A DNA stretch of 64,000 nt, from positions 62,001 through 126,000 of IMG/VR virus record IMGVR_UViG_3300038424_000251. The stretch is one strand, 5' to 3'. The position numbers were made by a program, and so were the translations under genes. This document shows positions 1-64,000 of the stretch, piece by piece. How positions within the stretch are numbered: position 1 is the stretch's first letter; every line of letters starts with the position of its first letter. The notes beneath the pieces were generated by a model. It was given only the letters and a program-made list of their open reading frames with translations, searched no databases and had not been told where the DNA came from.

Positions 1-153
1 TTCAACACCATTACAACCGATAAGAAAAGACAGTTGACGTTAAGAGAACTATTTTATATAATGTATGGAAAAGATGCACAATTTATTGATGTTGAGAATG
101 TTATGGAGATTGCTAGAACCATCAATAAACTTTTTTTATTGAGAGAAGTATAA
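1..153 (+). CDS. 3' end of a gene truncated by the window edge (…MYGKDAQFIDVENVMEIARTINKLFLLREV*), possibly a vWA/CobT-like C-terminus
   Basis: Frame 1 is open from base 1 to TAA at 151-153; the product guess is weak. Confidence 0.55.
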   Translation, partial: FNTITTDKKRQLTLRELFYIMYGKDAQFIDVENVMEIARTINKLFLLREV

Positions 154-160
154 ATAGATG

Positions 161-189
161 TTGACAAAACAAAGAATTTATGATATAGT
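161..189 (+). promoter_or_regulatory. sigma70-like promoter TTGACA-17-TATAGT with extended -10 TG
   Basis: Direct motif match upstream of ORF 241. Confidence 0.75.
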
Positions 190-240
190 GATTATAATAT
201 AAGTTCTATATTTAATAGAGCACAACAAGAAGGTATAGTT

Positions 241-642
241 ATGAGTATTAGAAAAACACAACGTAAAAATAAAACAAAGCAAGTTATTTCTTGGCCACCA
301 CACGATTCATATTTTACTATTGATAGTTTGGTAGAAATAAATCCTCATATGCTTACATCATCAGGTTCAGATATCACTCTGAGAGTTCGATTGAACAAAG
401 CAACAGATGAAGAAGGATTGGTAGCAGTAATAGGCCAAAAAAATTGTGGTAAAGGAAGACCGCAAAAAGTTTGGGCTATGCGACCTGTTAAACAATCTGC
501 TATTGACAAAGCAAAAGCTGATGGCATTTCTTTAGATATACCAAAAATTATGACCGTTATGGAAATTTCCACACAAACAGCTACTCCTGCCGTAACACCC
601 GTTACAAATATAGCGTCAACCGCCAAGACAGTAAATGCTTAA
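241..642 (+). CDS. putative winged-helix DNA-binding protein
   Basis: ITLRVRL helix followed by GKGRPQKVW wing-like motif; low-complexity Thr/Ala tail. Confidence 0.5.
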   Translation: MSIRKTQRKNKTKQVISWPPHDSYFTIDSLVEINPHMLTSSGSDITLRVRLNKATDEEGLVAVIGQKNCGKGRPQKVWAMRPVKQSAIDKAKADGISLDIPKIMTVMEISTQTATPAVTPVTNIASTAKTVNA

Positions 643-665
643 TCATATTAAAAAATATCATACAT

Positions 666-860
666 ATGAAAAGAAAAAAGATTGCGAAAAAGAAATCGCA
701 TTTGATTGACTTACATATGTATGGTATTTTTGATGTCAAGAGAAATACAATAATCAAAATTAGCCTTGACCCAACAGAAATACAAATGGAAATAGCCCTT
801 TCAGGTGGGTTAAATGAAAATCTTACAGAATGTGAATTTAACGTTAAACTAGCTATTTAA
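666..860 (+). CDS. hypothetical protein
   Basis: 64 aa ORF in operon position. Confidence 0.55.
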   Translation: MKRKKIAKKKSHLIDLHMYGIFDVKRNTIIKISLDPTEIQMEIALSGGLNENLTECEFNVKLAI

Positions 861-9200: not shown

Positions 9201-9837
9201 AACTTTTATTTTTAAATATCAAATCTTCCTGTAATAGTTCACCATTCAAATAATGAGAATAAGGACTATCAACTACTATAAAATTTATATATTTCAAATA
9301 ATTTACAACCTCATCTTTTAATGGAGCGCCTTCGTTACAACTTTTTAAGGAAACTTCCAACAATAGATATTTTGATTTTTTTATGGTGTTTATTCCACCT
9401 TTTATGATATCTAATTCAGAACCTTGAGTATCTATTTTTATCAAATCGTATGTATCAGTTACAAGATTATCTAATATATTCATTGGAAGATATATAATTT
9501 CACAATTTTTATCATTAAAAAATTCTGATATTTCTCTATAAATTGAATTTCCTGTTGAACCTCTTTCTGTTTTATTGATATAGAATTTAACACTTGATTT
9601 CTCTTTATCTCCTAATAATGCTATTATGTAATGAATGCCCATACTCTTTAAAGCGTTTTCAAAAAAAGGATTAGCTTCAATCATTGTAAAACTAGCAGCC
9701 GGCCATACAGTTTTACATAAATTTGTAAACCATCCATTACTAGCACCAATATCCAAAATAGTATTTGGTGTAAAATTGAATTTATTTTTTATACCGTGTA
9801 AAGCACTTAAATCCATATTATACTTTTGTTTTATCAA
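9175..9837 (-). CDS. FkbM-family SAM methyltransferase
   Basis: LDIGASNG, EANP, LIKIDTQGSELDIIKG. Confidence 0.9.
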   Translation of the reverse strand: MIKQKYNMDLSALHGIKNKFNFTPNTILDIGASNGWFTNLCKTVWPAASFTMIEANPFFENALKSMGIHYIIALLGDKEKSSVKFYINKTERGSTGNSIYREISEFFNDKNCEIIYLPMNILDNLVTDTYDLIKIDTQGSELDIIKGGINTIKKSKYLLLEVSLKSCNEGAPLKDEVVNYLKYINFIVVDSPYSHYLNGELLQEDLIFKNKSYDNILQIK

Positions 9838-13037: not shown

Positions 13038-13395
13038 ATGACTTTTCTTCTATTAGATTAGAATTGGTTTTTTCGTTGATTACTCTTTTTATCCATGATC
13101 TTGCATCATTATTGATATAAATTGTTCTAGCTATTTCAATAAATTCTTTATCAAATAATTGTTGGTCTTCCTTATATCGTATTTTATCTTCGGCATCCCA
13201 TAATATTTTGTTTACTGTTTTTAACGAAACTAAGAAAGAATTAATAGTAGGGTCTTCTAAATTAAAAATGGATTTTAATTGTTCTAGTTCTTTCAATACA
13301 TTTTTTCGTTTTTCTTCGTCGGTTATATTCTCTAATTTAATCATTAAAATAGATATTTTGTCAAGTATTTCTCCATTTGATACTTCAATCTTCAT
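13030..13395 (-). CDS. DUF6165-family protein
   Basis: EVSNGEILDKISIL.IK…LWDAEDKIR…IYINNDAR..IKR.IN…EEKSY. Confidence 0.8.
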   Translation of the reverse strand: MKIEVSNGEILDKISILMIKLENITDEEKRKNVLKELEQLKSIFNLEDPTINSFLVSLKTVNKILWDAEDKIRYKEDQQLFDKEFIEIARTIYINNDARSWIKRVINEKTNSNLIEEKSYA

Positions 13396-14119: not shown

Positions 14120-14969
14120 ACTTCTTGTTTATCATTTTATTCAATTCTTCCACTCTATCATATTGGTGAATAATACAATATGGTTCATTATTATTTCGAC
14201 AATAAATTATACCATCTTTGATTTCAGATATGTTGGACAACTGATTGATTTTTGTTCCTATTTGTAACGCCCAAGAGTCTTTAAAATTAACGACTTGGCA
14301 ATTATCTTTCAAAATACCTCTTGTTAAAATATTAAAAGATGGCTGATCACAATGACCAACCCCAACCGACATCAAATACATTATTAAGCAAAAATCAGGC
14401 ATTAATTTGGCATCACAAGCAAAAGTTCCTACATTACATGCTTCTTCATATTTGAGAAAATATTCATAAAGATATATCCCAAAATTTTTAATTAGGTTAT
14501 CTTTATTCCACGGTTCTGATTCATAAGTTATTCCTTCGGATGGAACCAATATAGGTTTATTACAATTTTTAGTTAACCAATCGCTGGGATTAATTTGAAA
14601 TATTATATCTCTACTATCGGTGTTTATGACATATCTATACAAAATTTGGCACTCTTTCAAATATTGCCATATATGGAACAAACGAACGTTGTGTATCAAC
14701 AAATGTGAATTTTGAGGCGTCACCAAACCACTATGCCATATGAAGTTTGTACCAATTTCATTACCTCTCATATCAGATGTAGGTATTAAGATATTTTTTA
14801 CATTCAATTCCTGTAGTTTCTGAATATATTCGTGATTATTGTTTTCAAAATTGTATGCAAGAATAAGAATATCTCCTGAATAGCTTGTATCTATTAAAGA
14901 GCGAATCCAATTTCGAATTTCACTCCATTGATAATTTTGGCTTATTGTAGTTATTACCAAATCCTTCAT
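14112..14969 (-). CDS. putative GT-A glycosyltransferase
   Basis: TDSRDIIFQINP, NVGT, DQPSFN, IIHQYDR. Confidence 0.65.
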   Translation of the reverse strand: MKDLVITTISQNYQWSEIRNWIRSLIDTSYSGDILILAYNFENNNHEYIQKLQELNVKNILIPTSDMRGNEIGTNFIWHSGLVTPQNSHLLIHNVRLFHIWQYLKECQILYRYVINTDSRDIIFQINPSDWLTKNCNKPILVPSEGITYESEPWNKDNLIKNFGIYLYEYFLKYEEACNVGTFACDAKLMPDFCLIMYLMSVGVGHCDQPSFNILTRGILKDNCQVVNFKDSWALQIGTKINQLSNISEIKDGIIYCRNNNEPYCIIHQYDRVEELNKMINKKYE

Positions 14970-19832: not shown

Positions 19833-21217
19833 AGTACCGAGCTAGTTACTGAATTGGTTGCTTCAGAACTTGAACTTGTTATTGGTGAAGGTGGATTTAT
19901 AGGTTTTAATTTCGGTAATTCTATCTTTTTCAATTTTGGTAAAATTAGCTTTTGTTCTGTAGCAAATTTAGGAACGTATTTTTCCAGAAGTTCGTAAAAT
20001 CTTTTATCCATAGCTTGAATAGAAAATTCTTCAACATTTTTTTTGCGAAGTTGTTCAGCTTTTTCAAGGAATGCTTTATAAAAATTAAAACAATTTCTCA
20101 TAGATTCCATTGCTTTAGGATAATCAACTGTAAACCATGATGATTCTTTAATCAGCCATTCATTTGCGCAATCTTCTGGAATTTTTTTTATTTCACCATG
20201 TAATAATTTACAAAATTTTGAGTCAAGAAAATCCAAATGACCGCTCCAATTAGAAGCTAATACAGGTTTACCACTTAAAGTAGAAAGCAATAATGGAAGA
20301 CCAAATCCTTCACCATGAGTGAAAGAAATATGTGCTTTAATCTTTGGATGATTATAGAGAGCATTCATTTCTGATTCCGTTAATTCGCCATATAGAATAT
20401 AAACGTTGGGAAGGTCTTTGGTATTTTTTTCCTGTTCAACTATGGACCTAACGGATTTTAATCGGTTAATCATATCGTGTTTATCCATGTTACATATTGC
20501 TGCTCCATTAGTCTTAATAACCAGAGCTGGTTTTCTTTTAGGTCCCATATTGGAAAATGTTATTAAGAAGGTTTTAATCAAATTACCAATATCTTTTCTG
20601 TCATTAAACAAACCACCACTTGTCCATTGACCAACAAAAAGAAAACAAAAATCTTCTTTAATAACAGACAATTCTTCTTCAATTCTTGGTTCAAATGATT
20701 TGTCATTTCCGTAAATTGATGTATCTGCTCCCCAAAATAACACTTCTATTGGTTTTATAGATTTTAATATTATAGGTGATTGGTTTGGTGCGGCTGGTTT
20801 TTGATATAATGGTTCTTCAAATACACTTTTAGCATGATTTGAAGTAACAATATTAAAATTCATTCTATTCAATCCTTCAATCCAATCTGTTCTGGCTAAG
20901 GTCGTCTCAATACCAGCAGTTATACCAATATTATATTTTGCTGGTGGTTGAAATTCATTAGGAATAGAACACTGAATAAATAATTCTGGTTGTTTAGACA
21001 ATGGTTGTCTAACAATTCTTTTGTATAATTCTTGCTCTGCAGAATCAGTTACATCTGAAAATAAATATTTTCTACTGCAATTACCCCAACGAGTAGGAAC
21101 TATCATCAAGTCATATTTGTCATATCTGAGCAAGCTTTTAGCTAAGGCTAATCCCAGATCACCATAGCCTGACCTAGTCCAAACCGGGGATTGAAAAATA
21201 CATATTGGTTTGTTCAT
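19829..21217 (-). CDS. GT4 glycosyltransferase
   Basis: SGYG, FLFVGQW…RKD, HGEGFGLP…KPVLASNWSGHLDF. Confidence 0.85.
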   Translation of the reverse strand: MNKPICIFQSPVWTRSGYGDLGLALAKSLLRYDKYDLMIVPTRWGNCSRKYLFSDVTDSAEQELYKRIVRQPLSKQPELFIQCSIPNEFQPPAKYNIGITAGIETTLARTDWIEGLNRMNFNIVTSNHAKSVFEEPLYQKPAAPNQSPIILKSIKPIEVLFWGADTSIYGNDKSFEPRIEEELSVIKEDFCFLFVGQWTSGGLFNDRKDIGNLIKTFLITFSNMGPKRKPALVIKTNGAAICNMDKHDMINRLKSVRSIVEQEKNTKDLPNVYILYGELTESEMNALYNHPKIKAHISFTHGEGFGLPLLLSTLSGKPVLASNWSGHLDFLDSKFCKLLHGEIKKIPEDCANEWLIKESSWFTVDYPKAMESMRNCFNFYKAFLEKAEQLRKKNVEEFSIQAMDKRFYELLEKYVPKFATEQKLILPKLKKIELPKLKPINPPSPITSSSSEATNSVTSSVL

Positions 21218-22172: not shown

Positions 22173-23671
22173 ATATTTGCACTTTCTATTTGTTGTTTAA
22201 TTTTTTCTTGGTCAAATTTGGGAATTTCAAATCCCATTCCACCCGGCATCAAATTACCTACATAATCATTTTCGGTAAAAATACTAAAAGGTTTTACGGA
22301 CTTGAAATTATTCAAAGTATAATCCATACATTTGATAAATTCATTACACATGTTTTCAGAATTGATACCACCTTCATTCATTGCCCATCTTCTTCCTTCT
22401 TCACCACATTTTGTTCTTTTTTCATCTCCCATCAAATACCAGTACATTAATCCTTCAGCCGCATCTTCCCAACGTGTCATATCATCAAAAATATATGGTG
22501 TTGGAATAGAACCCTGAATGCATTGAACGAGTGGATATACAGGATACGCCCATATACCATGTTTCTTATATTTACCTATATTATTAGAACCAAAATGTAA
22601 ATCAAATTCTATGGGTGAACCATCATCCTTGGTTTGCCCTATTTGGTCTTGAAGTCCACCAGTTACAGCTGTAATAATAGGTGTGCCAGCCATAAGTGAT
22701 TCTGCAGTTGAAAGACCAAATCCTTCATTTGATGACAGATTAATAGTGACATCAGCAATGTTATATAATAAGTTTAAATCTTCTGGTGGATATTTTGCTG
22801 TTGAAAACATAACATCATAGTTTGGACAGAAGGCTTCTTTAACGGCCAGCAAATCTGTTCCAGCTTCTTGACGAACTTCTGTATGTAATATCAATATACA
22901 TTTTTCTGATTCTTCTTTTGGAAGATTGTCACAAAATGCTTTATAGGCTAACATGATATTACTTGTTCTCTTTCTTTGAACATTTCGTGAATTGTAAAAG
23001 ATTATGAAGTTATAATCCTTATTATGAAACATATCTTTGCGTCGTTTTTGTAAATTGGTATCATCTTTTGGAAGAGGATGGAATATTTTACTATTAATTC
23101 CATGAGGAACATAATGTAATACAGTCTTATTATCTGTATCTTTAGAATCGATGGTGGAAACTTTATCTGGTCCTAACACCCATTTGTTTATGTTATACGT
23201 TTGTTTGCTGATTGACATTAATAAATCACATGATTCGTAGTATGGTCTGTTGTACATTGGAAATGGGATATCATCCCAAATATTCAAGTAAGTTAAGGGC
23301 ATTTTAGAACGAATTTGCCTTTCTATAGCATATAACCATCCCCAGAATCTTGGATCTGTAAAATGAAGAAGTGCATCAGGTTTTTCTCTCTCAACAATAC
23401 TAAATAAAATTTCTTCATTTCCATAACCATCAACAGGATATAAAGTTACTTTTGCATCTTTAATGCCTGAAATTTGTGCGGTAGCTGCATCCATGTTGAC
23501 TATTTTACCTTTTTCAGGATGTTGAATTGCACCGGCAATCTGAACCCAATCATAATGTTTGACGGTCCCTAAAACGACTTCTCTTGTCATAGTAGCCACA
23601 CCTGAATGCATCCTCAAGTCATCGGACAAACATATTATTTTTGGTTTAGCCATAATGATTTTAAGAACCAA
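22169..23671 (-). CDS. GT4 glycosyltransferase
   Basis: HSGVA, VPHG, SRNVQRK, YNIADVTINLSSNEGFGLSTAESLMAGTP. Confidence 0.9.
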   Translation of the reverse strand: MVLKIIMAKPKIICLSDDLRMHSGVATMTREVVLGTVKHYDWVQIAGAIQHPEKGKIVNMDAATAQISGIKDAKVTLYPVDGYGNEEILFSIVEREKPDALLHFTDPRFWGWLYAIERQIRSKMPLTYLNIWDDIPFPMYNRPYYESCDLLMSISKQTYNINKWVLGPDKVSTIDSKDTDNKTVLHYVPHGINSKIFHPLPKDDTNLQKRRKDMFHNKDYNFIIFYNSRNVQRKRTSNIMLAYKAFCDNLPKEESEKCILILHTEVRQEAGTDLLAVKEAFCPNYDVMFSTAKYPPEDLNLLYNIADVTINLSSNEGFGLSTAESLMAGTPIITAVTGGLQDQIGQTKDDGSPIEFDLHFGSNNIGKYKKHGIWAYPVYPLVQCIQGSIPTPYIFDDMTRWEDAAEGLMYWYLMGDEKRTKCGEEGRRWAMNEGGINSENMCNEFIKCMDYTLNNFKSVKPFSIFTENDYVGNLMPGGMGFEIPKFDQEKIKQQIESANI

Positions 23672-44215: not shown

Positions 44216-45844
44216 GTGGGTCTTAAAAAATCACAAAAAAATGTAAGTGCTTATCGCTCTCATATGGAGATGCGAGAAGGTCTTAGTTTTAGTGATTATT
44301 TTGATGATTCTGTTCCTTACGAAGTAAAACCTCTTCCTCCGGTTACTCCAACTATGGAAGAAGATGATAATAAGTTTGTTGGACATTCTGATTTTCCTAC
44401 TCAAGCCAAAGATTTATTTAAAGGTCTTTGGGAAACCGAAAATTTATTAAACAGTAAATATGACTCTTTTTGGTTAGATAAAATAGGGAAATTTTATTCT
44501 GCTGGTAGTTCACATTTCCACTGGGCCCAAATGTATTTAAGACAAAATAATGTTGTGCATGGCGAATATACAGTGTCAGAAAAAATGTTTGAGTTGGGAT
44601 TTATTAAAGTTTCATTGTTTAGATTATACAAAAAGCTTAATTTTGAATATGATAGAAAAATAGGTCCTCCAAATTATCGTCAAATGGCAAAATTAAAAAA
44701 TGCAGCAATAGAGTTAGGATATACTTTACATGATACTATAACAAATAAATCAATAGAACTTACAGAGTCACTTTTACTTAAAAATATCTTAAATTGTCCA
44801 AAAACCAATAAATTGATTTTGAAAGAAGCAGCAAGAATTCTATCTCCAAATACACACTACTTTTTGGATCCCCAAGGAGAATTTCACAACGTTGACATAG
44901 AAGGCAGTCATATGAACTGGACTAAAAAATATATGGCTTCTAAAGGACTTACGTATCATAGTGAAGGAAATCCATACGCAGCAGCATTCAAATTAGGATT
45001 AATTAGAATAGTAACTGATGAAAATATGATGGTTATTGACCATTCAAAAGAAGTATTGCCCACCGAACTTCAATTAAAGATATTAAAAGATACGGCTAAA
45101 AAATCTGGGTTAATTCTGTTTGATAATACTCTTAATAAGACTATAAACCTTACAGAATCATCAAATTTACTTGATAATAGAAGGATTAAAGACCTATTTA
45201 TAGAAGGTATGATGCCCGATGACATAGATACATTTAAATCGCACTTGGTACAGTTATTTGCTCATTTACAAAAAGAGTTAAAATTCAAAATTGTTCCAAA
45301 AGTAAAACTGTTGTCAAATGACAAGAATGCTGCAAAAGTTTTAGGCAAAACAGCTTATTATGACCCTGATACTAGAACAATTAATTTATATGTAACCGAT
45401 AGACATCAAAAGGATATTCTTCGTTCTTTTTCCCATGAAACAGTTCATCATTGGCAACATGAGAATGAAAAATTTCAAACGAGTAGAACCGGAGGTAAGG
45501 CTGGTGAAGACCCCCAATATGCTCAACACAATCCTTGGTTGCGACAGATGGAAAAACAAGCATACTTACTTGGTAATATAATCTTTCGTGATTGGGAAGA
45601 CCAGAAAAAAGCTAAAGACCGAAAAAGTGGTAAAAAAATGGTTGAACTGCATGGGAAGAATAATGTATCCAAAGATTCTCATACTCCTATAATGAAAAAA
45701 TATTATCGTCCATCTCACCCCTATAGAAAGCATACAGAAGGTCCGTATCCTAATCCTGAAGGAGATGATGGCGAATGTATTAGTGAAAAAACATATTTAC
45801 TTGGTAAGGAATATCCACGGAAAAAAATGGATTATAGTGGATAA
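44216..45844 (+). CDS. multidomain protein: duplicated ~100-aa domain plus C-terminal HExxH metallopeptidase-like domain
   Basis: Repeats ending NK.I.LTES; TAYYDP…LRSFSHETVHHWQ…MEKQAY. Confidence 0.7.
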   Translation: MGLKKSQKNVSAYRSHMEMREGLSFSDYFDDSVPYEVKPLPPVTPTMEEDDNKFVGHSDFPTQAKDLFKGLWETENLLNSKYDSFWLDKIGKFYSAGSSHFHWAQMYLRQNNVVHGEYTVSEKMFELGFIKVSLFRLYKKLNFEYDRKIGPPNYRQMAKLKNAAIELGYTLHDTITNKSIELTESLLLKNILNCPKTNKLILKEAARILSPNTHYFLDPQGEFHNVDIEGSHMNWTKKYMASKGLTYHSEGNPYAAAFKLGLIRIVTDENMMVIDHSKEVLPTELQLKILKDTAKKSGLILFDNTLNKTINLTESSNLLDNRRIKDLFIEGMMPDDIDTFKSHLVQLFAHLQKELKFKIVPKVKLLSNDKNAAKVLGKTAYYDPDTRTINLYVTDRHQKDILRSFSHETVHHWQHENEKFQTSRTGGKAGEDPQYAQHNPWLRQMEKQAYLLGNIIFRDWEDQKKAKDRKSGKKMVELHGKNNVSKDSHTPIMKKYYRPSHPYRKHTEGPYPNPEGDDGECISEKTYLLGKEYPRKKMDYSG

Positions 45845-50236: not shown

Positions 50237-51892
50237 ATGATAAACTTGGATATTCAGTGGAGCGATCCTTATCAATGGGAAAATAAAGACGGTGAACTTG
50301 TGTGGCGCCGTGTTTGGAAAATTCCTGTAGAATACCGTCCACCGTTTTTTGCTTTTTGGAACAAAGCTAAATATAAATTGTGGGGTGAAGGTTTCTCTGT
50401 TGCCAAAGTTGATGACGATTGGTGTCTTTATGAAACCAAAGTTTGTATAGAAAATTTTAGTGAGCTTGATGGCCAGAAGCCACCCTCCCCCCCTTTAGAG
50501 GCTGAAGATTTCTGGCTACCCCCCTACAAGGTTGAAAATGAGAAAGGTCTTAGGTCTTGGCAGATAGAATCTGTGAGTAAGCTAGTTACTGCTATTAATA
50601 AAACCGGTTGTGCAATAGATGGTTCTGATACAGGTGTTGGTAAGACTTATGTAGCTTGTGCTGTTGCCAGAGAACTTAAAATGAAAATGCTTGTAGTATG
50701 TCCAAAAGCTGTAATGGAACCTTGGAAACGAGTAATAGTTAATCATTTTAAGATGAAGGATTTATTGATTGGTATTATTAATTATGAACAAATACGAATA
50801 GGTAAAATAGATTCTCCATTTGCTTCATATATTGAAAGCAAAAAAACTCATAAACGAAAATTTATATGGAAAATTCCAAAAGATACGTTGATTATTTGGG
50901 ATGAATCACAAAAACTTAAAAATTGGAAAACTAAAAATTCGAAGACGTGCATTGAAGCACTCAAGCAAAACTATAAGATGTTATTCTGTTCAGCTACTAA
51001 TGCAACCAATCCCCTCGAACTTAGAACAGTGGGCACTTGTTTAAAATTATTTAAGGGCGCAACAGCCTATTATCAGTGGTGTTATGAACATGGAGTTTAT
51101 AAAGGTCGTTTTGGTTTAGAGTTTACTTCTGATATGAAACTTAGGCAAAAAGTTTTAAAAAAATTACATACAGATATTTTCATTAATAGGGGAGTTCGGT
51201 TGACCCGTGATACAATTCCTAATTTTCCTGAATCTGAAATTATTGCTGAATGTTATAACATGGATGACGAAGATGTTAAGAAAATTAACAAGTGTCATGA
51301 GGAAATGCAGAAAGAATTAAAAGAATTAGCCAAGTTGACCAAGGCTGATAAGGCTAGTGAATTGACTGCAATCCTGCGCGCGCGTCAAGGTATAGAATTA
51401 GTGAAAGTTCCTCTATTTATGGACATGATTGAAGAGGGGTTAGAAGATGGAATGTCTGTAGTGGTCTTTGTCAATTTTACTGAAACTCTTCGAGCTATAG
51501 CGAAAAGATTAAATACTCTATGTATTTTTGATGGTAAAACCAAGGATGAAGTTCGTCAACAAAGTGTAGATGATTTTCAATCTGGCAAAGAAAAGGTGAT
51601 TTTGGTGAATATAGCTAGTGGGGGTGCGGGCTTGTCTCTTCATGATATAAATGGTATGAATCCACGTTTAACCTTGATATCACCAAGTTATTCTGCTGTA
51701 TTGATGAGGCAAGCTACTGGTAGAGTGTGGAGAGAAAATGCAAAAAGTAAAAGTGTTCAAAAAATAGTATTTGTAGCTGGAACAGTTGAAGAGCAAGTTT
51801 GTGACAATGTTAGAGAAAAACTTAAAAATCTTGACCTTCTAAATGATGGAGATTTAAAATATGAAAAAAGATATGAAAGCGTCAGCGCTTAA
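50237..51892 (+). CDS. SF2 (SNF2-like) helicase
   Basis: SDTGVGKT, WDESQ, SAT, GGAGLSL, QATGRVWR. Confidence 0.9.
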   Translation: MINLDIQWSDPYQWENKDGELVWRRVWKIPVEYRPPFFAFWNKAKYKLWGEGFSVAKVDDDWCLYETKVCIENFSELDGQKPPSPPLEAEDFWLPPYKVENEKGLRSWQIESVSKLVTAINKTGCAIDGSDTGVGKTYVACAVARELKMKMLVVCPKAVMEPWKRVIVNHFKMKDLLIGIINYEQIRIGKIDSPFASYIESKKTHKRKFIWKIPKDTLIIWDESQKLKNWKTKNSKTCIEALKQNYKMLFCSATNATNPLELRTVGTCLKLFKGATAYYQWCYEHGVYKGRFGLEFTSDMKLRQKVLKKLHTDIFINRGVRLTRDTIPNFPESEIIAECYNMDDEDVKKINKCHEEMQKELKELAKLTKADKASELTAILRARQGIELVKVPLFMDMIEEGLEDGMSVVVFVNFTETLRAIAKRLNTLCIFDGKTKDEVRQQSVDDFQSGKEKVILVNIASGGAGLSLHDINGMNPRLTLISPSYSAVLMRQATGRVWRENAKSKSVQKIVFVAGTVEEQVCDNVREKLKNLDLLNDGDLKYEKRYESVSA

Positions 51893-52250: not shown

Positions 52251-52929
52251 AGTTCTGGATATTGTAGTGAAGGAATTACAAGAAGTTAAAAAAAAGGTTG
52301 CTAACATTGAAAATAAAACTGTTTTAGAAGAATTACAACTTCCAGAAGAAGATTTAAAAGCTCTTGGTGTTATTAAAGATAATCCTAGAAGACTTAGAAG
52401 AGGTAGAGGCGCTAGACCACTTCTTGAATCAGAAATAAAAGAAGCTCAAGAACATTGTGATAATGCTATGGCTTGTGCTAGATATCTTAATGTAGGATAT
52501 AATTGTTATAAAAAGTGGGCAAAAACTTATAACTTGTTTAAAACAAATCCTTGGGGTAAAAATGCTAAAAAAAGATATTGGGCTCCCAATAAAGGCAAAT
52601 ATCCACTTAATCAAATACTTGAGGGCAAATTTCCAAATTATCCCATTTATAGGCTTAAAGACCTTCTTATAAGAAGTGGAATAAAAAAAGCAGAATGTGA
52701 AAACTGTGGATTTGATGAACACCGATTAACCGATAATAAAATGCCACTTCTGATAAGTTTTAAAGATGGTAATGAAAAAAATCATCTGTTAGAAAATATA
52801 GAAATATTGTGCTATAATTGTATGTTTCTTACTGGACGGGGATACATACGAAAAGGTAAAGTAGAATTTAATTTTTTAGATCCCGATAGAATTCAAGGTT
52901 CTTCCCGAAAAATCGAAGCTCGATTCTAA
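52204..52929 (+). CDS. HTH plus degenerate HNH/zinc-finger protein
   Basis: ACARYLNVGYNCYKKWAK (HTH); CENCG…DGNEKNHLLENIEILCYNC lacking the catalytic His. Confidence 0.7.
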   Translation: METQQTNQVPVTMENKVLDIVVKELQEVKKKVANIENKTVLEELQLPEEDLKALGVIKDNPRRLRRGRGARPLLESEIKEAQEHCDNAMACARYLNVGYNCYKKWAKTYNLFKTNPWGKNAKKRYWAPNKGKYPLNQILEGKFPNYPIYRLKDLLIRSGIKKAECENCGFDEHRLTDNKMPLLISFKDGNEKNHLLENIEILCYNCMFLTGRGYIRKGKVEFNFLDPDRIQGSSRKIEARF

Positions 52930-53584: not shown

Positions 53585-54631
53585 ATGTCTAGAAAAAATA
53601 ACAAAAATTTAGATGATGTAAGTCTGGCTATCTTTTTTAAAGATTTTGCTCACTGGATAAGGTCTAGCTGTGTAGGATTAAATGTAGCTGGATTTACCAC
53701 TGCTAAATATCTTAATAAATGCGGTATAAATGCTTCTGCATTTCCCGTTCGTCATAATGTGGATATAGTTTATACTATAGACCATTACAATGAAACACAT
53801 AAAAAACGATTGACTCATGTAGTTATTTCAGCTCCTTGGTTAAGTGTTTATGATATGAAACACTTAATAAAAAACTTTTCTGATATTCAATTTGTCATAT
53901 TATCCCATTCTAACGTTGGGTTTTTACAAGCAGACCCACATGGAGTGGAACTTTTTAGAAAATATGCTGAATTATCTAAAATACATAAAAATTTGAAAGT
54001 GGGTGGTAACTCTCCACAGTTTGTTAATTGGTTTAGAACATCATATAATGAAGAATGTGTTTGTCTTCCAAATTTATATCCTGTCTCACATATTAGTAGC
54101 AAAGTTTGGAATGGATCCTATCCAATAAAAATAGGAATATTTGGAGCTATACGGCCAGAAAAAAATTTTATGACTGCCGCTGCGGCTGCGCTGGCCATGC
54201 ATTCAATATTAAGTATTCCAGTTGAAATACACATGTCAACTGGTGGAGAAGAATGTAAATCCACTACATTGTCATCTATCATAGAGATGACAGAACATAT
54301 TAAAGGCATAACTTTAATAAAAGAAAATTGGGAAACATGGGACAAATTTATTGAACTTGTAAAACAAATGGATTTACTGATACAAGTGTCATACACAGAA
54401 TCATTCAATATGATAACCGCTGATGGAATTTCTGTTGGAGTCCCATCTGTTGTATCACCGGTCATTCGTTGGGCACCCAATTCTTGGAAAGCTGATGCAG
54501 ATGATGCTCTAGATGTTTCTAAAGTGGGTATCAAATTACTTACCACTAATCAACATCATATTGGTAGTGATACTTTGCATAAAAGTAATGAACGCAATTT
54601 AAAATATTGGTTGAACTTCTTAAGAAATTAA
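53585..54631 (+). CDS. GT4-like glycosyltransferase (start reassigned to MSRKNNK)
   Basis: IGIFGAIRPEKN, MDLLIQVSYTESFNMITAD…GVPSV; TATTTAT upstream. Confidence 0.75.
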   Translation: MSRKNNKNLDDVSLAIFFKDFAHWIRSSCVGLNVAGFTTAKYLNKCGINASAFPVRHNVDIVYTIDHYNETHKKRLTHVVISAPWLSVYDMKHLIKNFSDIQFVILSHSNVGFLQADPHGVELFRKYAELSKIHKNLKVGGNSPQFVNWFRTSYNEECVCLPNLYPVSHISSKVWNGSYPIKIGIFGAIRPEKNFMTAAAAALAMHSILSIPVEIHMSTGGEECKSTTLSSIIEMTEHIKGITLIKENWETWDKFIELVKQMDLLIQVSYTESFNMITADGISVGVPSVVSPVIRWAPNSWKADADDALDVSKVGIKLLTTNQHHIGSDTLHKSNERNLKYWLNFLRN

Positions 54632-55878: not shown

Positions 55879-56867
55879 AATATAAAAAATTACTTTCTAC
55901 AATAGTTTGTTTTCTATGTTGCCTTTTCTTTGGAGAAATTTCTTTACAAGCAACACAAAATGTGACTCTTGCGTGGAATCCAAGTACTGACTCAACTGTT
56001 GCGGGATATAAAATTTATTACGGGTCAGCTAGTGGTAATTACACTAATGTAGTTGATGTTGGTAATGTAACAAATGCTACTATTAGTGGATTAGTTGAAG
56101 GTGTCACTTATTATTTTGCAGCTACCTGCTATAATAGTTCTGGTATTCAAAGTCCATTTTCAAATGAAGTCTCTTATACCGTACCAAATTTGTGTCCTAC
56201 AATAAATTCTGTAAGTAATATTTTTATTAATGAGAATGCTGGTCAACAAGTAGTTAATCTGTCCGGTATTACTGGAGGATTTGGTACATATTCAACTATT
56301 ACTATCACTGCATCTTCAGGTAATACCAATTTAATACCTAATATTACAGTAATTTATACAAGTCCAAATACAAATGGGACTTTGGTTTTTACACCGCTAA
56401 CATATGCTTATGGTGTAATTACTAATACAGTGACCGTTAAGACTGATAAAACTAATACTAATTATAATACTACTGCAACAAGTTTTATAATTACAATAAG
56501 TGCTGTTAACCAATGGCCAACATTGACTCTTCCAATTACTAATTTAACTATCAATGAGAACAACGGGTCAACAAATGTAAGCTTTTCCAATGTTACTTCT
56601 GGTGCTCCGAATGAAAGTCAAATACTTACTGTTACTAATTCATCCAGTAATACTAATTTAATTCCAAATCCAATTGTTAATTATACTAACCCATTCACAA
56701 TAGGATCCTTGACTCTTACACCAAAAACTAATATCAGTGGTTTATCTACTATTTTTGTGACTGTAAATGATGGTGGTATTACTAATAATGCTACAACAAA
56801 TAAATTTACAACAACAGTTTTACCATTGCCACCACCAAACTTTCATATTATTAGCGCAACTCAATAA
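55875..56867 (+). CDS. secreted fibronectin type III plus Ig/cadherin-like repeat protein
   Basis: Signal peptide; VTLAWNPS….AGYKIYYG…GL.EG.TYYFAAT.Y; two Thr/Asn-rich INEN…SSGNTNLIPN repeats. Confidence 0.85.
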   Translation: MKYKKLLSTIVCFLCCLFFGEISLQATQNVTLAWNPSTDSTVAGYKIYYGSASGNYTNVVDVGNVTNATISGLVEGVTYYFAATCYNSSGIQSPFSNEVSYTVPNLCPTINSVSNIFINENAGQQVVNLSGITGGFGTYSTITITASSGNTNLIPNITVIYTSPNTNGTLVFTPLTYAYGVITNTVTVKTDKTNTNYNTTATSFIITISAVNQWPTLTLPITNLTINENNGSTNVSFSNVTSGAPNESQILTVTNSSSNTNLIPNPIVNYTNPFTIGSLTLTPKTNISGLSTIFVTVNDGGITNNATTNKFTTTVLPLPPPNFHIISATQ

Positions 56868-60612: not shown

Positions 60613-60630
60613 ATTTTTTACTTTTTGTTA

Positions 60631-62883
60631 CTACATAAAATCTGTTAAGTCTAATCGTTGTTTCCCATCCCACATATAACCAACTTTTTTCCAACCTGAA
60701 TGGTTGGGGTCTAAAGCATCTGCGCAAATTATATTATGATTTAAGATATCCCATATTTCTTTATCAGATTTTCCTAGTGATAACCGGTGTTTACATTCCT
60801 CAATATTTGTTTCATTTATATCAACTCCATATATTGTTTGAAGAGCATCTAAATGAGTTATTCCATTTAACATTTTTCTTTGAAGAACTTCAAGAAGAAA
60901 ATTTCCATTACCACATGAGATATCGCTATCTATTTTAGAATCTATTACATTCGACGTATCCATTATTTTTCTAACAAACGATATGGGTGTAAATACTTCC
61001 CCATTTTTCTTTATATTTTCTATAGTGTGATATTTGTGACCATTTTCATTACTTTCTTGATTATTACATAATCTTTTATCCATCGTGGAAAAATAATTGT
61101 CTATAAATTTTTCTTCTTCATTGGTTAATTGAAAATCTTTTGATATTCGTGGAAGATTTTTCCAAGTGTACATTGAAATCTGATAATTAGAATAAAGACA
61201 TATTTTTAACAAAAATTGAATGATTTTAGAATTTAAAATATCAATCAGTGTTTTGGCTTCATTTTCGTCTTTAACTACTATATAAGGAAAATGACTTGTA
61301 GTTCCTATATTTTCTGCGTAAAATGGTTCAATGGATAAACTATCGGAAACTATTACTTTTTTCTTATCAAAATCTTTAGATTTTTTCTGTAAAAATATTC
61401 TTTTCTTATTAGTAAATATGTGTTCAAATTTATATTTATTATCCTTTACATTTATGTGGTCTTTATAACCAAGGTTATCTCTTTTAAATTCTAATTTATC
61501 ATATTTTTCTAATCTGCTTAATAACGATTTAACACACTCATTATAAACATTAGGAAGAAATTTTATATTATTAGATATTAAACAATTGGCTATAGTCCCA
61601 TCTTCTGATTTTATAATCGTTGGTGTTTTTAATTTAGTCTTTTGACAAATATACCAGTCAATTTTTGTACCTACAGAAGACCCATTAGGATATTTAAATT
61701 TTTTTCTATATTCTGAATTTAACTCTAGATAAATAAAATTATAATTTTTTAAATATAACTCTAAAATTTTATTTGGTTTTTCCCTCCAATTCATAGGATG
61801 AATCATGTATAAAACTCCATTATCTTCTAAATATTTATCTGCTTGAATAATAAATTCTTTCCACAATTCATTTCCTTTACCACCCGTATTGTCTTCTTTA
61901 AATTTTTGATAGGGTGGATTGCTGTAAATTCTTGTAGCTTTCAATTTTTTTCTCCATTTTGAAAAATCTTTAATAACTATCATTTTCCCATTACATATTT
62001 CATTATTAAATTTTTCAGCTAATTTCCGTTTTCTATAATTTTTGGAAATAAAACCTATAGTATTATTAGTAAAATCATATCCATATAAATAAAACCACTC
62101 TAAAAGCTCAAAAGTATCACTTATAATAAGTGTTTCATTTTGCGGTAATCCTCTATATTTTAAATCGGTTTCTATTATTTGTTTGCATAAGTCTGATGGT
62201 GTATGAACATTTTGAATAGATGTTTCTTTTCCATTATTGACTCCATTTACCATTTCATAACTACTAATATACAACTCTCTTTTAGAATGTAAAGAAAATT
62301 TATTAGTGTTTTTATCGTACTTTAAACTTTTTATATAGTCATCATCATTGTCACACTCAAAATATGGAGAATTACAATTTTCATTGTTCATCAAAAACAA
62401 ATTTTTGTTTATAGCTTCTTCTATAGTTTCTAACATTAAGTTACTATGAATATTTAAAATAATGATGTAATCTCTTATCTTTTTGTCTTTTAATAAATCA
62501 TTCATCAATAATTTGTCTTTATAAGCAGACGAAGATGAAATACTCCAATTATACGGACCGTTTAAATAATTTAATACTACAATTGATGGTAATAAAAAGC
62601 AATAAAACTTTGTTCCTCCGAAAAGCATTGTAGGTAATTTTTTATATTTATCTTGATACTCCTTTTTTAAATAATGAATTTGTTGAGCAATAATTTTGTG
62701 ATAATTTCTTTCAAGATATTTATATTCACACATTATCTCATTGTTTTTATATTCAAAATTATTATCTTTTTTGCCTTTAGCGTGAATACAAATTTTTAAT
62801 TTTTTTTCAAAAGCAATTGCATAGGCAAATTTAACTTCATCTTCATTAGAGGCAATTTTAAGTTTTTTATAAAAATTTAGCAT
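60631..62883 (-). CDS. fused restriction-modification-like protein (nuclease-like N-terminus, NPPY MTase region, TRD, C-terminal SAM-binding module)
   Basis: NEDEVK…D…CEYK…AQ..HY; SNPPYQ; GEVFTP, DISCGNGNFL, IYGVDI, NIICADAL. Confidence 0.75.
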   Translation of the reverse strand: MLNFYKKLKIASNEDEVKFAYAIAFEKKLKICIHAKGKKDNNFEYKNNEIMCEYKYLERNYHKIIAQQIHYLKKEYQDKYKKLPTMLFGGTKFYCFLLPSIVVLNYLNGPYNWSISSSSAYKDKLLMNDLLKDKKIRDYIIILNIHSNLMLETIEEAINKNLFLMNNENCNSPYFECDNDDDYIKSLKYDKNTNKFSLHSKRELYISSYEMVNGVNNGKETSIQNVHTPSDLCKQIIETDLKYRGLPQNETLIISDTFELLEWFYLYGYDFTNNTIGFISKNYRKRKLAEKFNNEICNGKMIVIKDFSKWRKKLKATRIYSNPPYQKFKEDNTGGKGNELWKEFIIQADKYLEDNGVLYMIHPMNWREKPNKILELYLKNYNFIYLELNSEYRKKFKYPNGSSVGTKIDWYICQKTKLKTPTIIKSEDGTIANCLISNNIKFLPNVYNECVKSLLSRLEKYDKLEFKRDNLGYKDHINVKDNKYKFEHIFTNKKRIFLQKKSKDFDKKKVIVSDSLSIEPFYAENIGTTSHFPYIVVKDENEAKTLIDILNSKIIQFLLKICLYSNYQISMYTWKNLPRISKDFQLTNEEEKFIDNYFSTMDKRLCNNQESNENGHKYHTIENIKKNGEVFTPISFVRKIMDTSNVIDSKIDSDISCGNGNFLLEVLQRKMLNGITHLDALQTIYGVDINETNIEECKHRLSLGKSDKEIWDILNHNIICADALDPNHSGWKKVGYMWDGKQRLDLTDFM

Positions 62884-62910
62884 TGCTTTTGATTTTTGTT
62901 TGACTTACTT

Positions 62911-63381
62911 TTACTTAATTATCACTTTGTCAACTTCATCTTTTGTTGGACGTTCGTATTTATTTAAAAATTTATCAATAATTTCTGGCCCAACATGGCG
63001 TTCACGTTTAGCATCTCTTCTCAAAAGTTCATCTCTTGGAACTTCAAATGTAACAGCTATAATGAATGCTCCGTGACTTTTTCCTAAGTTAATCCAATCT
63101 CTTCTAGCTTTTCTACTGACACTAGTAGCATCAATCATTACACTTTTATCTGCACTCAATGCTGATGAAACTCTTTGTCTGGCTATTCCGAAGGCTGCAG
63201 CTGAAACAGTCTGGTCATCTTCTCCTGAGCCAATCTCACTCCTTATTTTGTCGGTAGAAACATAAACAATACCATTATCTAAAGCAAATTTTTTCCCCCA
63301 AGTTGATTTACCACTTGCAGGTGGTCCAACAAGAATAATCAAAGCTTTTTCTTCATCATCAATGTCAATTAATTTATTCAC
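62911..63381 (-). CDS. AAA_33 / polynucleotide kinase-like P-loop kinase
   Basis: GPPASGKST, STDKIR, IDAT, R..KR. Confidence 0.85.
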   Translation of the reverse strand: MNKLIDIDDEEKALIILVGPPASGKSTWGKKFALDNGIVYVSTDKIRSEIGSGEDDQTVSAAAFGIARQRVSSALSADKSVMIDATSVSRKARRDWINLGKSHGAFIIAVTFEVPRDELLRRDAKRERHVGPEIIDKFLNKYERPTKDEVDKVIIK

Positions 63382-63736
63382 AAATTTCTTCTTTATCTCT
63401 GTAAGTGGATAAAATCATATTTATATTAGCTCTACCTACGGGGTTAAACGAATGAACTCTCCATTCTGGTAATGGCTTACCTAATTTCATACAATGTTCA
63501 ATCAACCATTTAGCACAATCATATCCCGTTTTTTCTTTATAGTTTTCATAATCGACAGGCTGATTATAATGTTCTTCATCTAAATCATGGTCAAATGATA
63601 TTAAGTCAGGCAAACCTTTTTCAATAATTGTTTCTATAAATTGTTCATAATTGCGAACTACATACCATTCACCTAATTCAGCGTTAAGAAATGAAACAGG
63701 TTCGCGGTTGTCATCAAGGAATAAATTATAGCTCAT
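63374..63736 (-). CDS. cyclic-phosphate processing receiver-domain protein
   Basis: LFLDDNR, VRNY, ISFDHDL, TGYDCAKWL, HSFNPVGR. Confidence 0.85.
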   Translation of the reverse strand: MSYNLFLDDNREPVSFLNAELGEWYVVRNYEQFIETIIEKGLPDLISFDHDLDEEHYNQPVDYENYKEKTGYDCAKWLIEHCMKLGKPLPEWRVHSFNPVGRANINMILSTYRDKEEICE

Positions 63737-63971
63737 TGCCTTCTATTATATCTATAAAGCCAGCATTTGTCAATTCTTTTAATGCTTCTTCATGCGTTCC
63801 ACCATATTCATAAAGCACCGTCAAAGGAACGTTAAGAAATGATCGTGGTATTAAATTATCAAAATCATAATCATCTTGACCCATGAATTCATACCAATAA
63901 ATGAGTTTTCCATTATAAAACTTTTTTCTAGAATGGAAAATTACCGTAATATCTGATGCTTTCTTGTCCAT
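63726..63971 (-). CDS. hypothetical protein
   Basis: 81 aa ORF with AAGGA SD. Confidence 0.6.
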   Translation of the reverse strand: MDKKASDITVIFHSRKKFYNGKLIYWYEFMGQDDYDFDNLIPRSFLNVPLTVLYEYGGTHEEALKELTNAGFIDIIEGNEL

Positions 63972-64000
63972 ATTATCCTTCTCATAATTAGGTGCGTCAT

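What the first reader, a model, noticed from the sequence alone, without database searches (positions are those of the whole stretch)
1..64000. Near-absence of GATC
Seen: I found only about eight GATC sites (21157, 23353, 44867, 50264, 52879, 54114, 56704, 63841) and may have missed a few. Base composition predicts on the order of 150. Asp before a C-starting codon is almost always GAC although GAT dominates elsewhere. Together with CCWGG, both classical Dam and Dcm motifs are purged. Inference: pressure from MboI/Sau3AI/DpnII-like restriction or from methyl-directed nucleases. It also suggests that the phage's own modifications do not protect these sites.
Basis: seen in the sequence. Interest (0 to 1): 0.6.

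Follow-up and report, generated by a model that had tools for sequence, protein, structure and literature searches.

The report
GATC restriction-site avoidance in jumbo phage
This uncultured 365-kb peat phage has removed almost every GATC and CCWGG site, plus several other restriction-enzyme sites, through silent codon choices; this is the familiar phage tactic of avoiding host restriction sites, seen here in a new lineage.

Summary
The window has 10 GATC sites: the eight listed plus 13097 and 14345. About 183 are expected from composition or a Markov model, and 148 from synonymous-codon shuffles (z about -15). The whole 365,299-bp genome has 72 against about 1,000 expected. CCWGG is absent from the window and occurs once in the genome against about 224 expected.

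The depletion acts at the DNA level. It appears in all three codon phases (Asp before C is GAT in 6-8% of cases against 78-89% elsewhere) and in non-coding DNA.

It is not limited to the Dam and Dcm motifs. GTATAC, GTMKAC, CCCGGG, CCATGG, GGTCTC and GTAC are also depleted.

The residual GATC sites are scattered, not clustered, and mostly not conserved in relatives, which usually carry GACC there.

Across about 60 related viral contigs, GATC loss follows the PolB tree. It is near-total in this clade and in a Mel-JY01-like clade, and weak in the sister clade. It varies independently of CCWGG loss.

I found no full-length Dam, C5 methylase, hmC pathway, deazaguanine pathway or GATC nuclease in the genome.

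Best reading: ordinary Type II restriction-site avoidance at mutation-selection balance. The host is unknown, so I cannot tell whether the enzymes involved cut unmethylated or methylated sites. This is a known phenomenon in a new lineage.

The parts
1..64000 (.). GATC-depleted and CCWGG-free stretch. It is part of a genome that is uniformly depleted (window = genome 62001-126000).
   Evidence: 10 GATC against 183 expected; 0 CCWGG against about 25-34 expected. Whole genome: 72 against 1,005 and 1 against 224.
13097..13100 (.).
14345..14348 (.).
21157..21160 (.). Residual GATC in a GT1-like ORF 19829-21217 (-), phase GAT|C. Relatives carry AATC, AGTC or ATTC at this position.
23353..23356 (.). 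Residual GATC in the GT4 glycosyltransferase ORF 22169-23671 (-), phase GAT|C. It is one of three residual sites kept in any avoiding-clade relative, and the only one aligned to more than two records: kept in G002 and G001, GGTC in G003 and G005.
44867..44870 (.). Residual GATC in ORF 44216-45844 (+), phase GAT|C. Relative G003 has GACC.
50264..50267 (.). Residual GATC in the SNF2-type helicase ORF 50237-51892 (+), phase GAT|C. G002 and G003 have GACC; G005 keeps GATC.
52879..52882 (.). Residual GATC in ORF 52204-52929 (+), phase GAT|C. G002, G003 and G005 all have GACC.
54114..54117 (.). Residual GATC in ORF 53453-54631 (+), phase NGA|TCN.
56704..56707 (.). Residual GATC in the fn3-domain ORF 55875-56867 (+), phase NGA|TCN.
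63841..63844 (.). Residual GATC in the ORF 63726-64022 (-), which runs off the window end. Not conserved in G002 or G005.
32984..34594 (+). Phage gamma-class N6-adenine DNA methyltransferase (Eco57I / PglX-like). It belongs to the phage's own methylation set and is not a Dam-type enzyme.
   Evidence: Pfam Eco57I 1.3e-11 and N6_Mtase 2.5e-10; NCBIfam BREX PglX 2.7e-24, below its cut-off
60631..62883 (-). 750-aa ORF with two methyltransferase-like regions (MTS-like at residues 300-366, N6_Mtase at 622-717). Its specificity is unknown.

Best explanation
This is restriction-site avoidance. The phage lineage has been under long-lasting selection against short palindromes that Type II restriction enzymes in its host population cut. 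For GATC the candidate enzymes are MboI/DpnII/Sau3AI isoschizomers, for CCWGG they are EcoRII/BstNI-type, and further enzymes would target GTATAC/GTMKAC, CCCGGG, CCATGG, GGTCTC and GTAC. Sites are removed by silent changes: GAC replaces GAT before C, ATT or ATA replaces ATC after G, and GGA or AGA is avoided before TCN. AT-biased mutation, mainly GAC to GAT, keeps creating a few new sites. The 72 residual genomic sites (10 in the window) are therefore a young, scattered mutation-selection residue and not functional elements. Shown here: the size of the depletion, its action at the DNA level, its motif specificity, its distribution over the phylogeny, the turnover of residual sites, and the lack of a recognisable self-protecting modification for these motifs. 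Inferred: that restriction endonucleases are the selective agent, and which enzymes they are.
For: Size of the effect: window 10 against 183, genome 72 against 1,005, z = -15 and -35. The synonymous-shuffle null gives 9 against 148 and 63 against 836. DNA-level selection: all three codon phases are purged, and non-coding DNA too (9 against 56). The target is the 4-bp core: given the GATC count, the 6-mers NGATCN have O/E of about 1 (BclI 1.10, BstYI 1.10, BamHI 1.14). One-mismatch neighbours are in excess (GATG/CATC 1.47). Other Type II sites are purged as well: CCWGG 1/224, CCCGGG 0/26, GTATAC 2/51, GTMKAC 11/110, GGTCTC 3/21, CCATGG 11/44, GTAC 296/749. GGCC, AGCT, CCGG, GANTC and GCNGC are near expectation. 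Composition does not explain it: Flavobacterium phage immuto (GC 34%) has 130/146 and the uncultured 484-kb phage LR756508 has 198/193. The trait is lineage-wide and labile: O/E is 0-0.19 in 16 of 17 contigs with at least 62% PolB identity and GC 31-42% (the exception, L071, has 0.37). It is 0.68-0.89 in the sister clade and 0-0.13 in a 44-46% identity clade. The closest cultured relative, Microcystis phage Mel-JY01, has 0/92. Motifs behave independently: L072, L076, L075 and L106 lack GATC but have CCWGG at about the expected level, and the sister clade shows the reverse. Residual sites are unclustered. Only 3 of 22 site-by-relative comparisons within the avoiding clade are conserved, and the usual alternative is GACC. 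No recognisable self-protection was found: no C5 methylase (19), no PF05869 Dam (58), only a weak and apparently truncated D12-like ORF (18, 24, 79), no ThyA/hydroxymethylase family (46) and no TGT/DpdA (76). Literature: near-total elimination of sites (O/E below 0.1) is typical of orthodox Type II sites in non-temperate dsDNA phages (PMC6286503).
Against: The host is unknown, and no cognate GATC restriction enzyme has been linked to this phage. Two scans of 185,579 species genomes with PolB found nothing. The purge is incomplete: 72 sites would still let a GATC enzyme cut the genome, so either selection on GATC is weaker or more intermittent than on CCWGG, or what matters is site density and not site presence. 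The sister clade with near-normal GATC has no detectable Dam, TGT or other distinguishing gene in the fragments held, which are 27-49% complete, so the contrast remains unexplained. Restriction enzymes are hard to recognise by sequence, so failing to find phage-encoded ones is weak evidence.
Confidence: 0.7

Rival explanations
1. Methyl-directed restriction. The hosts carry orphan Dam-like (GATC) and Dcm-like (CCWGG) methylases, so phage DNA becomes marked at these sites. DpnI-type (Type IIM) or Type IV nucleases in neighbouring strains then cut it. Having no sites is the only state that is safe in both kinds of host.
For: GATC is the one Type IIM site that is under-represented in all 46 phages whose hosts encode such enzymes (PMC6286503). 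The closest cultured relative, Mel-JY01, has 0 GATC in 42.5 kb although its host genus is a cyanobacterium. Almost all cyanobacteria outside the picocyanobacteria carry the GATC methylase DmtA (PMC4390886). In such a host, unmethylated-site cutters alone would give little pressure.
Against: It needs a separate host methylase and a methyl-dependent nuclease for each of the many other purged motifs (GTATAC, CCCGGG, CCATGG, GGTCTC, GTAC). GATC and CCWGG avoidance are decoupled among relatives. The host of this phage is unknown, and no psbA was found to suggest a cyanophage.
Confidence: 0.17
2. Dam-linked host processes other than restriction, as proposed for enterobacteriophages. MutH would nick under-methylated GATC in fast-replicating phage DNA, or mismatch repair would act on it, and this counter-selects GATC.
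For: This is the classical explanation for GATC scarcity in phiX174 and other coliphages (PMC5014478, citing McClelland 1984 and Deschavanne & Radman 1991). Joint scarcity of GATC and CCWGG resembles the pattern in coliphage T7 (my own knowledge).
Against: It explains GATC only, not the parallel purge of at least six other motifs. Among 14 control genomes, MutH was found only in E. coli. The trait occurs in a phage of Microcystis and in peat and wetland contigs with GC 31-42%, which makes a MutH-bearing gammaproteobacterial host unlikely for the whole group.
Confidence: 0.05
3. Self-compatibility with a phage weapon. The phage encodes its own GATC- or CCWGG-specific nuclease to shred host DNA and has removed the sites from its own genome.
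For: A genome nearly free of a 4-bp site would tolerate such an enzyme. The genome encodes many unannotated ORFs and several methyltransferases.
Against: No DpnII/MboI family and no MutH/Sau3AI family match anywhere in the 365-kb genome. ORFs next to the five methyltransferase genes show no nuclease of restriction type. The 72 residual sites would be self-cut. One enzyme would not explain eight or more avoided motifs.
Confidence: 0.03
4. No selection. The depletion is a by-product of mutational bias (for example deamination of methylated CCWGG), codon usage, or an assembly or library artefact.
For: The genome is AT-rich, and codon bias could in principle distort k-mer counts.
Against: Shuffles that preserve proteins and codon usage still expect 148 sites in the window and 836 in the genome. 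The deamination products CTWGG and CCWAG are not in excess (0.76 and 0.93). Non-coding DNA is depleted too. The sequence recurs in 24 peat and wetland runs from 24 studies (seven of them flagged as the window's possible source) and as a 99.97% identical 189-kb contig with the same 36 sites. Diverged relatives share the trait, while other low-GC phages do not.
Confidence: 0.01

Closest known systems
Type II restriction-site avoidance in non-temperate dsDNA phages (survey by Rusinov et al. 2018, PMC6286503)
   Same: Near-elimination (O/E below 0.1) of orthodox Type II palindromes, with several sites avoided at once. GATC is among the most consistently avoided sites.
   Different: Here the host and its restriction-modification repertoire are unknown. 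The genome is a 365-kb uncultured T4-like jumbo phage from peat. The purge can be traced over a deep clade, with gains or losses motif by motif.
Coliphages T7/T3 and phiX174: scarcity of GATC and, in T7, of CCWGG (McClelland 1984 and Deschavanne & Radman 1991, as cited in PMC5014478; the T7 site counts are from my own knowledge)
   Same: Both the Dam motif (GATC) and the Dcm/EcoRII motif (CCWGG) are strongly under-represented, through silent changes.
   Different: Those phages infect Dam+ MutH+ enterobacteria, where mismatch-repair explanations apply. Here many additional motifs are purged, and the relatives and habitat do not point to an enterobacterial host.
Microcystis phage Mel-JY01, the closest cultured relative (PolB 44% identity)
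   Same: A T4-like phage with 0 GATC in the 42.5 kb examined (92 expected). It also carries a glycosyltransferase block near PolB.
   Different: Mel-JY01 also lacks CTAG (0/29) but keeps GTAC and GTATAC. This genome shows the opposite emphasis (GTATAC 2/51, CTAG 0.67). The genomes are 190 kb and 365 kb.
Staphylococcus phage K and related large myoviruses that lack GATC (Sau3AI site); from my own knowledge, not checked here
   Same: A large virulent low-GC myovirus that is essentially free of GATC.
   Different: In phage K the cognate host enzyme (Sau3AI) is known. Here the agent is inferred.

Membership tests
Restriction-site (palindrome) avoidance in virulent dsDNA phages | The motif is far below expectation under nulls that respect composition and coding. 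| tested here: met
   10 against 183 (Markov) and 9 against 148 (synonymous shuffle) in the window; 72 against 1,005 in the genome
Restriction-site (palindrome) avoidance in virulent dsDNA phages | The depletion acts on DNA, not on protein or codon preference: it is present in every codon phase and in non-coding DNA. | tested here: met
   GAT|C 6-8% against 78-89%; ATC after NNG 0-0.5% against 11-14% after other third bases; GGA or AGA before TCN nearly absent; non-coding 9 against 56
Restriction-site (palindrome) avoidance in virulent dsDNA phages | Several unrelated Type II recognition sites are avoided while other palindromes are not. | tested here: met
   CCWGG, CCCGGG, GTATAC, GTMKAC, GGTCTC, CCATGG and GTAC are depleted. 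GGCC, AGCT, CCGG, GANTC and GCNGC are about as expected.
Restriction-site (palindrome) avoidance in virulent dsDNA phages | The host population encodes restriction enzymes of the avoided specificities. | not testable with these tools
   Host unidentified. PolB scans of species genomes found no relative, and no host-specific marker was found.
Restriction-site (palindrome) avoidance in virulent dsDNA phages | The phage has no self-protecting modification that covers the avoided motif. | tested here: inconclusive
   No C5 methylase, PF05869 Dam, ThyA-family hydroxymethylase or TGT/DpdA. However, there are four adenine methylases of unknown specificity and one weak D12-like ORF ending 14 aa after DPPY.
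Dam/MutH-driven GATC counter-selection (enterobacteriophage model) | The host carries Dam together with MutH. | not testable with these tools
   Host unknown. MutH was found only in E. coli among 14 control genomes.
Dam/MutH-driven GATC counter-selection (enterobacteriophage model) | The effect is specific to GATC. | tested here: not met
   Seven or more other motifs are purged as strongly or more strongly.
Protection by base hypermodification (T4 hmC/glucosyl-hmC; 7-deazaguanine phages) | A dCMP/dUMP hydroxymethylase (ThyA family) or a DpdA/TGT transglycosylase is encoded. | tested here: not met
   No PF00303 and no PF01702 match in the complete 365-kb record.
Phage-encoded GATC restriction-modification (chlorovirus-like R.CviAI/M.CviAI logic) | A GATC endonuclease (DpnII/MboI or MutH/Sau3AI family) is encoded with a GATC methylase. 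| tested here: not met
   No match to PF04556 or PF02976, and no confident Dam.

The most novel reading that the evidence does not exclude
GATC loss in this group of T4-like phages is deep. It is shared by this peat jumbo-phage clade, by a second uncultured clade, and by the Microcystis phage Mel-JY01, whose hosts methylate GATC constitutively. It may therefore reflect pressure from methyl-directed (DpnI-like or Type IV) defence in Dam-positive hosts, not from classical cutters of unmethylated sites. Under this reading, the clade-by-clade, motif-by-motif avoidance profile would serve as a usable fingerprint of the unknown hosts' methylomes and restriction repertoires.
Probability: 0.15. Interest if true: 0.45.

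Novelty: new member of a known kind. Interest (0 to 1): 0.3.

Why it matters
Restriction-site avoidance is a long-known anti-defence strategy, so this finding does not change the picture. Its value is practical and comparative. It shows that an uncultured 365-kb peat phage relies on sequence avoidance, not blanket DNA hypermodification, for at least eight motifs. It gives a motif list (GATC, CCWGG, GTATAC/GTMKAC, CCCGGG, CCATGG, GGTCTC, GTAC) that can be matched against the restriction-modification genes and methylomes of peat MAGs to find the host. It also provides a natural comparison: sister clades with and without GATC loss, and relatives where CCWGG loss is decoupled from GATC loss. These show how quickly such profiles turn over.

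Tried and rejected
1. Residual sites clustering in recently acquired genes. Rejected: there are 13 pairs closer than 1 kb against 12.8 at random, the sites lie in 56 different ORFs, and GC content is unremarkable.
2. Decay of CCWGG by m5C deamination. Rejected: no excess of CTWGG or CCWAG.
3. A 6-bp target such as BamHI, BclI or BstYI in place of the 4-bp core. Rejected: the conditional O/E is about 1.
4. Host identification. Two genome-contig scans with PolB, one with the single protein and one with a clade alignment, found no relative. There was no Por_Secre_tail domain and no psbA. Tail-protein tblastn gave only weak, mixed hits to Microcystis, Flavobacterium, Xanthomonas and Synechococcus phages. 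The IMG/VR 'provirus' flag on the 189-kb twin contig is spurious, because that contig is fully colinear with this genome and has no host flank.
5. Explaining the GATC-normal sister clade by a Dam, N6_N4 methylase, TGT or ThyA gene. No association was found. ThyA occurs in both kinds of clade, and the records are only 27-49% complete.
6. A phage-encoded GATC nuclease. No DpnII or MutH/Sau3AI family match, and nothing restriction-like next to the methylase genes.
7. Read laying on window 50201-56200 in four peat runs. Only assembled contigs were available. No listed variant fell on the three GATC sites, but 66 rows were hidden and coverage was patchy, so this says nothing either way.
8. megablast of 12 kb against GenBank phages found no match. 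A literature search for Mel-JY01 found no paper.
9. The careful maximum-likelihood tree did not finish in the time allowed, so the quick IQ-TREE result was used. Four PolB genes with internal stops were left out of the tree (L013, L106, L118, L125).

Full report
WHAT THE WINDOW IS. The window is bases 62001-126000 of a single-contig virus record of 365,299 bp with 33% GC. CheckV estimates it to be complete. It is a T4-like jumbo phage. It encodes a family-B DNA polymerase at window 29588-32185, a Gp23 capsid protein, a Gp20 portal, 53 tRNAs and a tmRNA. The best cultured relative is Microcystis phage Mel-JY01, at 44% PolB identity. All other T4-like phages are at about 30%, and a 12-kb stretch of the window found no nucleotide match among GenBank phages. 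The same sequence occurs in 24 peat and wetland metagenome runs from 24 studies, seven of them flagged as the window's possible source. A 189-kb IMG/VR contig is 99.97% identical and fully colinear with it.

THE OBSERVATION. An exact search gives ten GATC sites in the window.
- Expectation is 182 from base composition and 183 from a second-order Markov model.
- Shuffling synonymous codons within genes, with proteins and codon usage fixed, gives 148 +/- 9 for the coding part. The observed coding count is 9 (z = -15, minimum of 200 shuffles 123).
- Poisson P(X<=10 | 183) is about 4e-64.
- GATC is the most depleted 4-mer in both the window and the genome (O/E 0.05 and 0.07).
- The whole genome has 72 sites against about 1,005 expected, with 0-8 per 20 kb throughout.
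- CCWGG is absent from the window against about 25-34 expected. It occurs once in the genome, at 44450 outside the window, against about 224 expected.

The codon statement is also correct. In the window, Asp before a C-starting codon is GAT 6 times and GAC 87 times. Before A, G or T, GAT makes up 78-89%.

WHAT KIND OF DEPLETION IT IS. All three reading phases are purged (genome-wide).
- GAT|C: 44 GAT against 529 GAC.
- NGA|TCN: GGA precedes TCN 8 times and AGA 5 times, although each is among the two commonest codons for its amino acid.
- NNG|ATC: 5 of 967 Ile codons after NNG are ATC, against 11-14% after other third bases.

Non-coding DNA is depleted too (9 against 56). No amino-acid pair forces a GATC, so the entire purge is silent. 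Once the GATC count is taken into account, the flanking 6-mers (BclI, BstYI, BamHI) are at O/E of about 1.1, so the 4-bp core is the target. One-mismatch neighbours are in excess, notably GATG/CATC at 1.47. For CCWGG, the products expected from m5C deamination are not in excess (CTAGG 0.76, CCAAG 0.93). That argues against a mutational origin.

NOT JUST DAM AND DCM. A survey of classical Type II sites gives these observed/expected counts:
- CCWGG 1/224
- CCCGGG 0/26
- GTATAC 2/51
- GATC 72/1,005
- GTMKAC 11/110
- GGTCTC 3/21
- CYCGRG 11/45
- CCATGG 11/44
- GTAC 296/749

SpeI, XbaI, AflII, SphI and SacI sites are depleted more mildly. GGCC, AGCT, CCGG, GANTC, GGWCC, GCNGC and GCGC are near or above expectation. 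The synonymous-shuffle null confirms GTAC, GTATAC, CCATGG and CCWGG, and leaves GGCC unchanged. This is the pattern of multi-enzyme restriction avoidance, not a Dam/Dcm-specific effect.

THE RESIDUAL SITES.
- Location: the 72 genomic sites lie in 56 ORFs and 9 intergenic positions. Two are inside tRNA genes, judged from the site and gene coordinates.
- Clustering: there is none. 13 pairs are closer than 1 kb against 12.8 expected.
- Codon phase: 44 of the 63 coding sites are in the GAT|C phase.
- Conservation: at orthologous positions in three diverged relatives of the same avoiding clade, only 3 of 22 comparisons keep GATC. The commonest alternative is GACC.
- Population: the 99.97% identical twin contig carries the same 36 sites.

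The residue therefore looks like recent C-to-T changes at Asp third positions in an AT-biased genome. That is mutation-selection balance, not conserved functional sites or imported islands.

RELATIVES.
- I collected 76 PolB-bearing IMG/VR contigs and scored about 60 loci, mostly 12-23 kb and four of them about 5.5-6 kb.
- In the clade with at least 62% PolB identity to this phage (GC 31-42%), GATC O/E is 0-0.19 in 16 of 17 contigs. The exception is L071 at 0.37.
- In its sister clade (53-56% identity), GATC O/E is 0.68-0.89.
- In a further clade (44-46% identity) it is 0-0.13, and Mel-JY01 has 0 of 92 expected.
- A 35% identity outgroup has 0.62-0.72.
- On a quick maximum-likelihood PolB tree the low-GATC state needs about 3-4 changes, and no label shuffle out of 500 gave as few.
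- Other motifs vary independently. L072, L076, L075 and L106 lack GATC but have CCWGG at the expected level. The sister clade lacks CCWGG but keeps GATC. The Mel-JY01-like clade lacks CTAG, which this genome only mildly avoids. GTATAC is purged only in this phage's own clade.
- Two unrelated low-GC large phages show no GATC or CCWGG depletion: Flavobacterium phage immuto at 130/146 and uncultured LR756508 at 198/193.

Independent gain and loss motif by motif, tracking phylogeny, is what changing host restriction repertoires would produce.

THE PHAGE'S OWN MODIFICATION GENES.
- Present, with unknown specificity: two beta-class N6/N4 methylases (genome about 48.0-48.8 kb and 268.6-269.4 kb), two gamma-class N6-adenine methylase-like ORFs in the window (32984-34594, PglX/Eco57I-like; 60631-62883), and one weak D12-class ORF.
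- The D12-like ORF scores 28.6 bits on the Dam model against a cut-off of 115. Its product ends 14 residues after its DPPY motif. It is therefore not a confident Dam and may be truncated.
- Absent: C5 methylase, phage-type Dam PF05869, ThyA-family hydroxymethylase and TGT/DpdA.

It rests on not finding recognisable genes, not on chemistry.

The window also carries a large block of glycosyltransferases with two radical-SAM ORFs, and a GDP-mannose dehydratase. Whether these act on DNA is unknown. Without a hydroxymethylase, a T4-style sugar-on-hmC scheme is unlikely.

MECHANISM AND RIVALS.
- Best supported, about 0.7: selection by Type II restriction enzymes of the host population, resolved by silent site loss. 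This fits the survey showing that near-total elimination is typical of orthodox Type II sites in non-temperate dsDNA phages (PMC6286503).
- Why 72 GATC sites remain while only 1 CCWGG does: possibly weaker or intermittent selection. Alternatively, the enzymes may need two sites in proximity. Type IIE behaviour of EcoRII and Sau3AI is my own knowledge and was not tested, but it would make site density matter more than site presence.
- Main rival, about 0.17: methyl-directed restriction in Dam-positive hosts. GATC is consistently under-represented in phages whose hosts have DpnI-type enzymes. Mel-JY01 has no GATC in the part examined although almost all cyanobacteria outside the picocyanobacteria carry the GATC methylase DmtA (PMC4390886).
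- The enterobacterial MutH model (PMC5014478) explains only GATC. It requires a host type that the habitat and relatives do not suggest, and MutH was found only in E. coli among 14 control genomes.
- A phage-encoded GATC nuclease was not found.
- Artefact or neutral bias is excluded.

LIMITS. The host is unknown. ORFs were called crudely, as the longest non-overlapping ORFs of at least 50 aa. Relatives were sampled as loci of up to about 23 kb around PolB. The tree is a quick search. Absence of gene families in fragmentary relatives is weak evidence. The reads tool gave only assembled contigs and added nothing.

VERDICT. The restriction-avoidance interpretation is the best explanation. The Dam/Dcm framing is too narrow, and the choice between cutters of unmethylated sites and methyl-directed cutters stays open. 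This is a known phenomenon in a new, uncultured jumbo-phage lineage. Its added value is the motif fingerprint and the clade-level contrasts.

Noticed in passing
window 7729-23671 (-), and 54730-55878 (+): A long minus-strand block encodes GT2, GT7-like, GT1 and GT4 ('conflict-system' type) glycosyltransferases and two radical-SAM proteins (14966-16705; 17719-19149, B12-binding type). A GDP-mannose 4,6-dehydratase lies further on. The target is unknown: virion, host surface or DNA. Mel-JY01 has a similar glycosyltransferase block near its PolB.
   Followed up: partly
window 1384-2724 (+): A phage ORF matches the Druantia defence protein DruA (Pfam 5.6e-26). It is unusual to see a bacterial defence-system component carried by a phage.
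   Followed up: no
window 36973-37548 (+); elsewhere in the genome (not mapped): The window has a Macro-domain ORF. Outside the window the genome has two ADP-ribosylglycohydrolases, a PARP catalytic domain, and NAD salvage genes (NAPRTase, PRPP synthetase, NAD synthase). Together they suggest an NAD/ADP-ribose counter-defence toolkit.
   Followed up: no
genome 128814-295096 (outside the window); tRNA(CTA) at 266814-266888; tmRNA at 260388-260791: The genome has 53 tRNA genes, a tmRNA with a 25-aa tag, and a suppressor-like tRNA that reads TAG. Coding density is 92% under the standard code, so recoding is not required. Stop-codon usage was not examined.
   Followed up: no
genome about 267988-268453 (L016 768-1233, +): A GOLLD RNA (Rfam RF02032, 165.5 bits, above the gathering score) lies among the tRNA genes, just upstream of a beta-class DNA methylase.
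   Followed up: no
genome 149664-150401 (L014 1408-2145, +): A D12/Dam-class methyltransferase-like ORF has its FxGxG motif near the N-terminus and ends 14 residues after its DPPY motif, so the C-terminal catalytic-domain motifs are missing. It may be a decayed or split Dam-like gene. No counterpart was found in 20 related records.
   Followed up: partly
whole genome, for example GTAGAC/GTCTAC 2 against 26, GGTCTC/GAGACC 3 against 21, CTGAAG/CTTCAG 52 against 94: Non-palindromic motifs are also depleted, including BsaI/Eco31I-type and Eco57I/AcuI-type sites. The phage itself encodes an Eco57I/PglX-like methylase (window 32984-34594).
   Followed up: partly
L013, L106, L118, L119, L125 (PolB genes of relatives): The PolB match is about 1 kb longer than in the other relatives in L013, L106, L119 and L125. 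The translation has internal stops in L013, L106, L118 and L125. This suggests introns, homing-endonuclease insertions or frameshifts. L013, L106, L118 and L125 were left out of the tree.
   Followed up: no
IMG/VR contig behind L001 (G004, 189,152 bp): IMG/VR classes it as a 'provirus', but it is colinear with genome 87676-276840 at 99.97% identity (41 mismatches) and has no host flank. The provirus label looks spurious.
   Followed up: yes
L071 (79% PolB identity, 18 kb): This is the one member of the avoiding clade with partly relaxed GATC avoidance (21 against 56, O/E 0.37), while CCWGG and GTATAC are still absent. It may be a recent change of host or of defence exposure.
   Followed up: no
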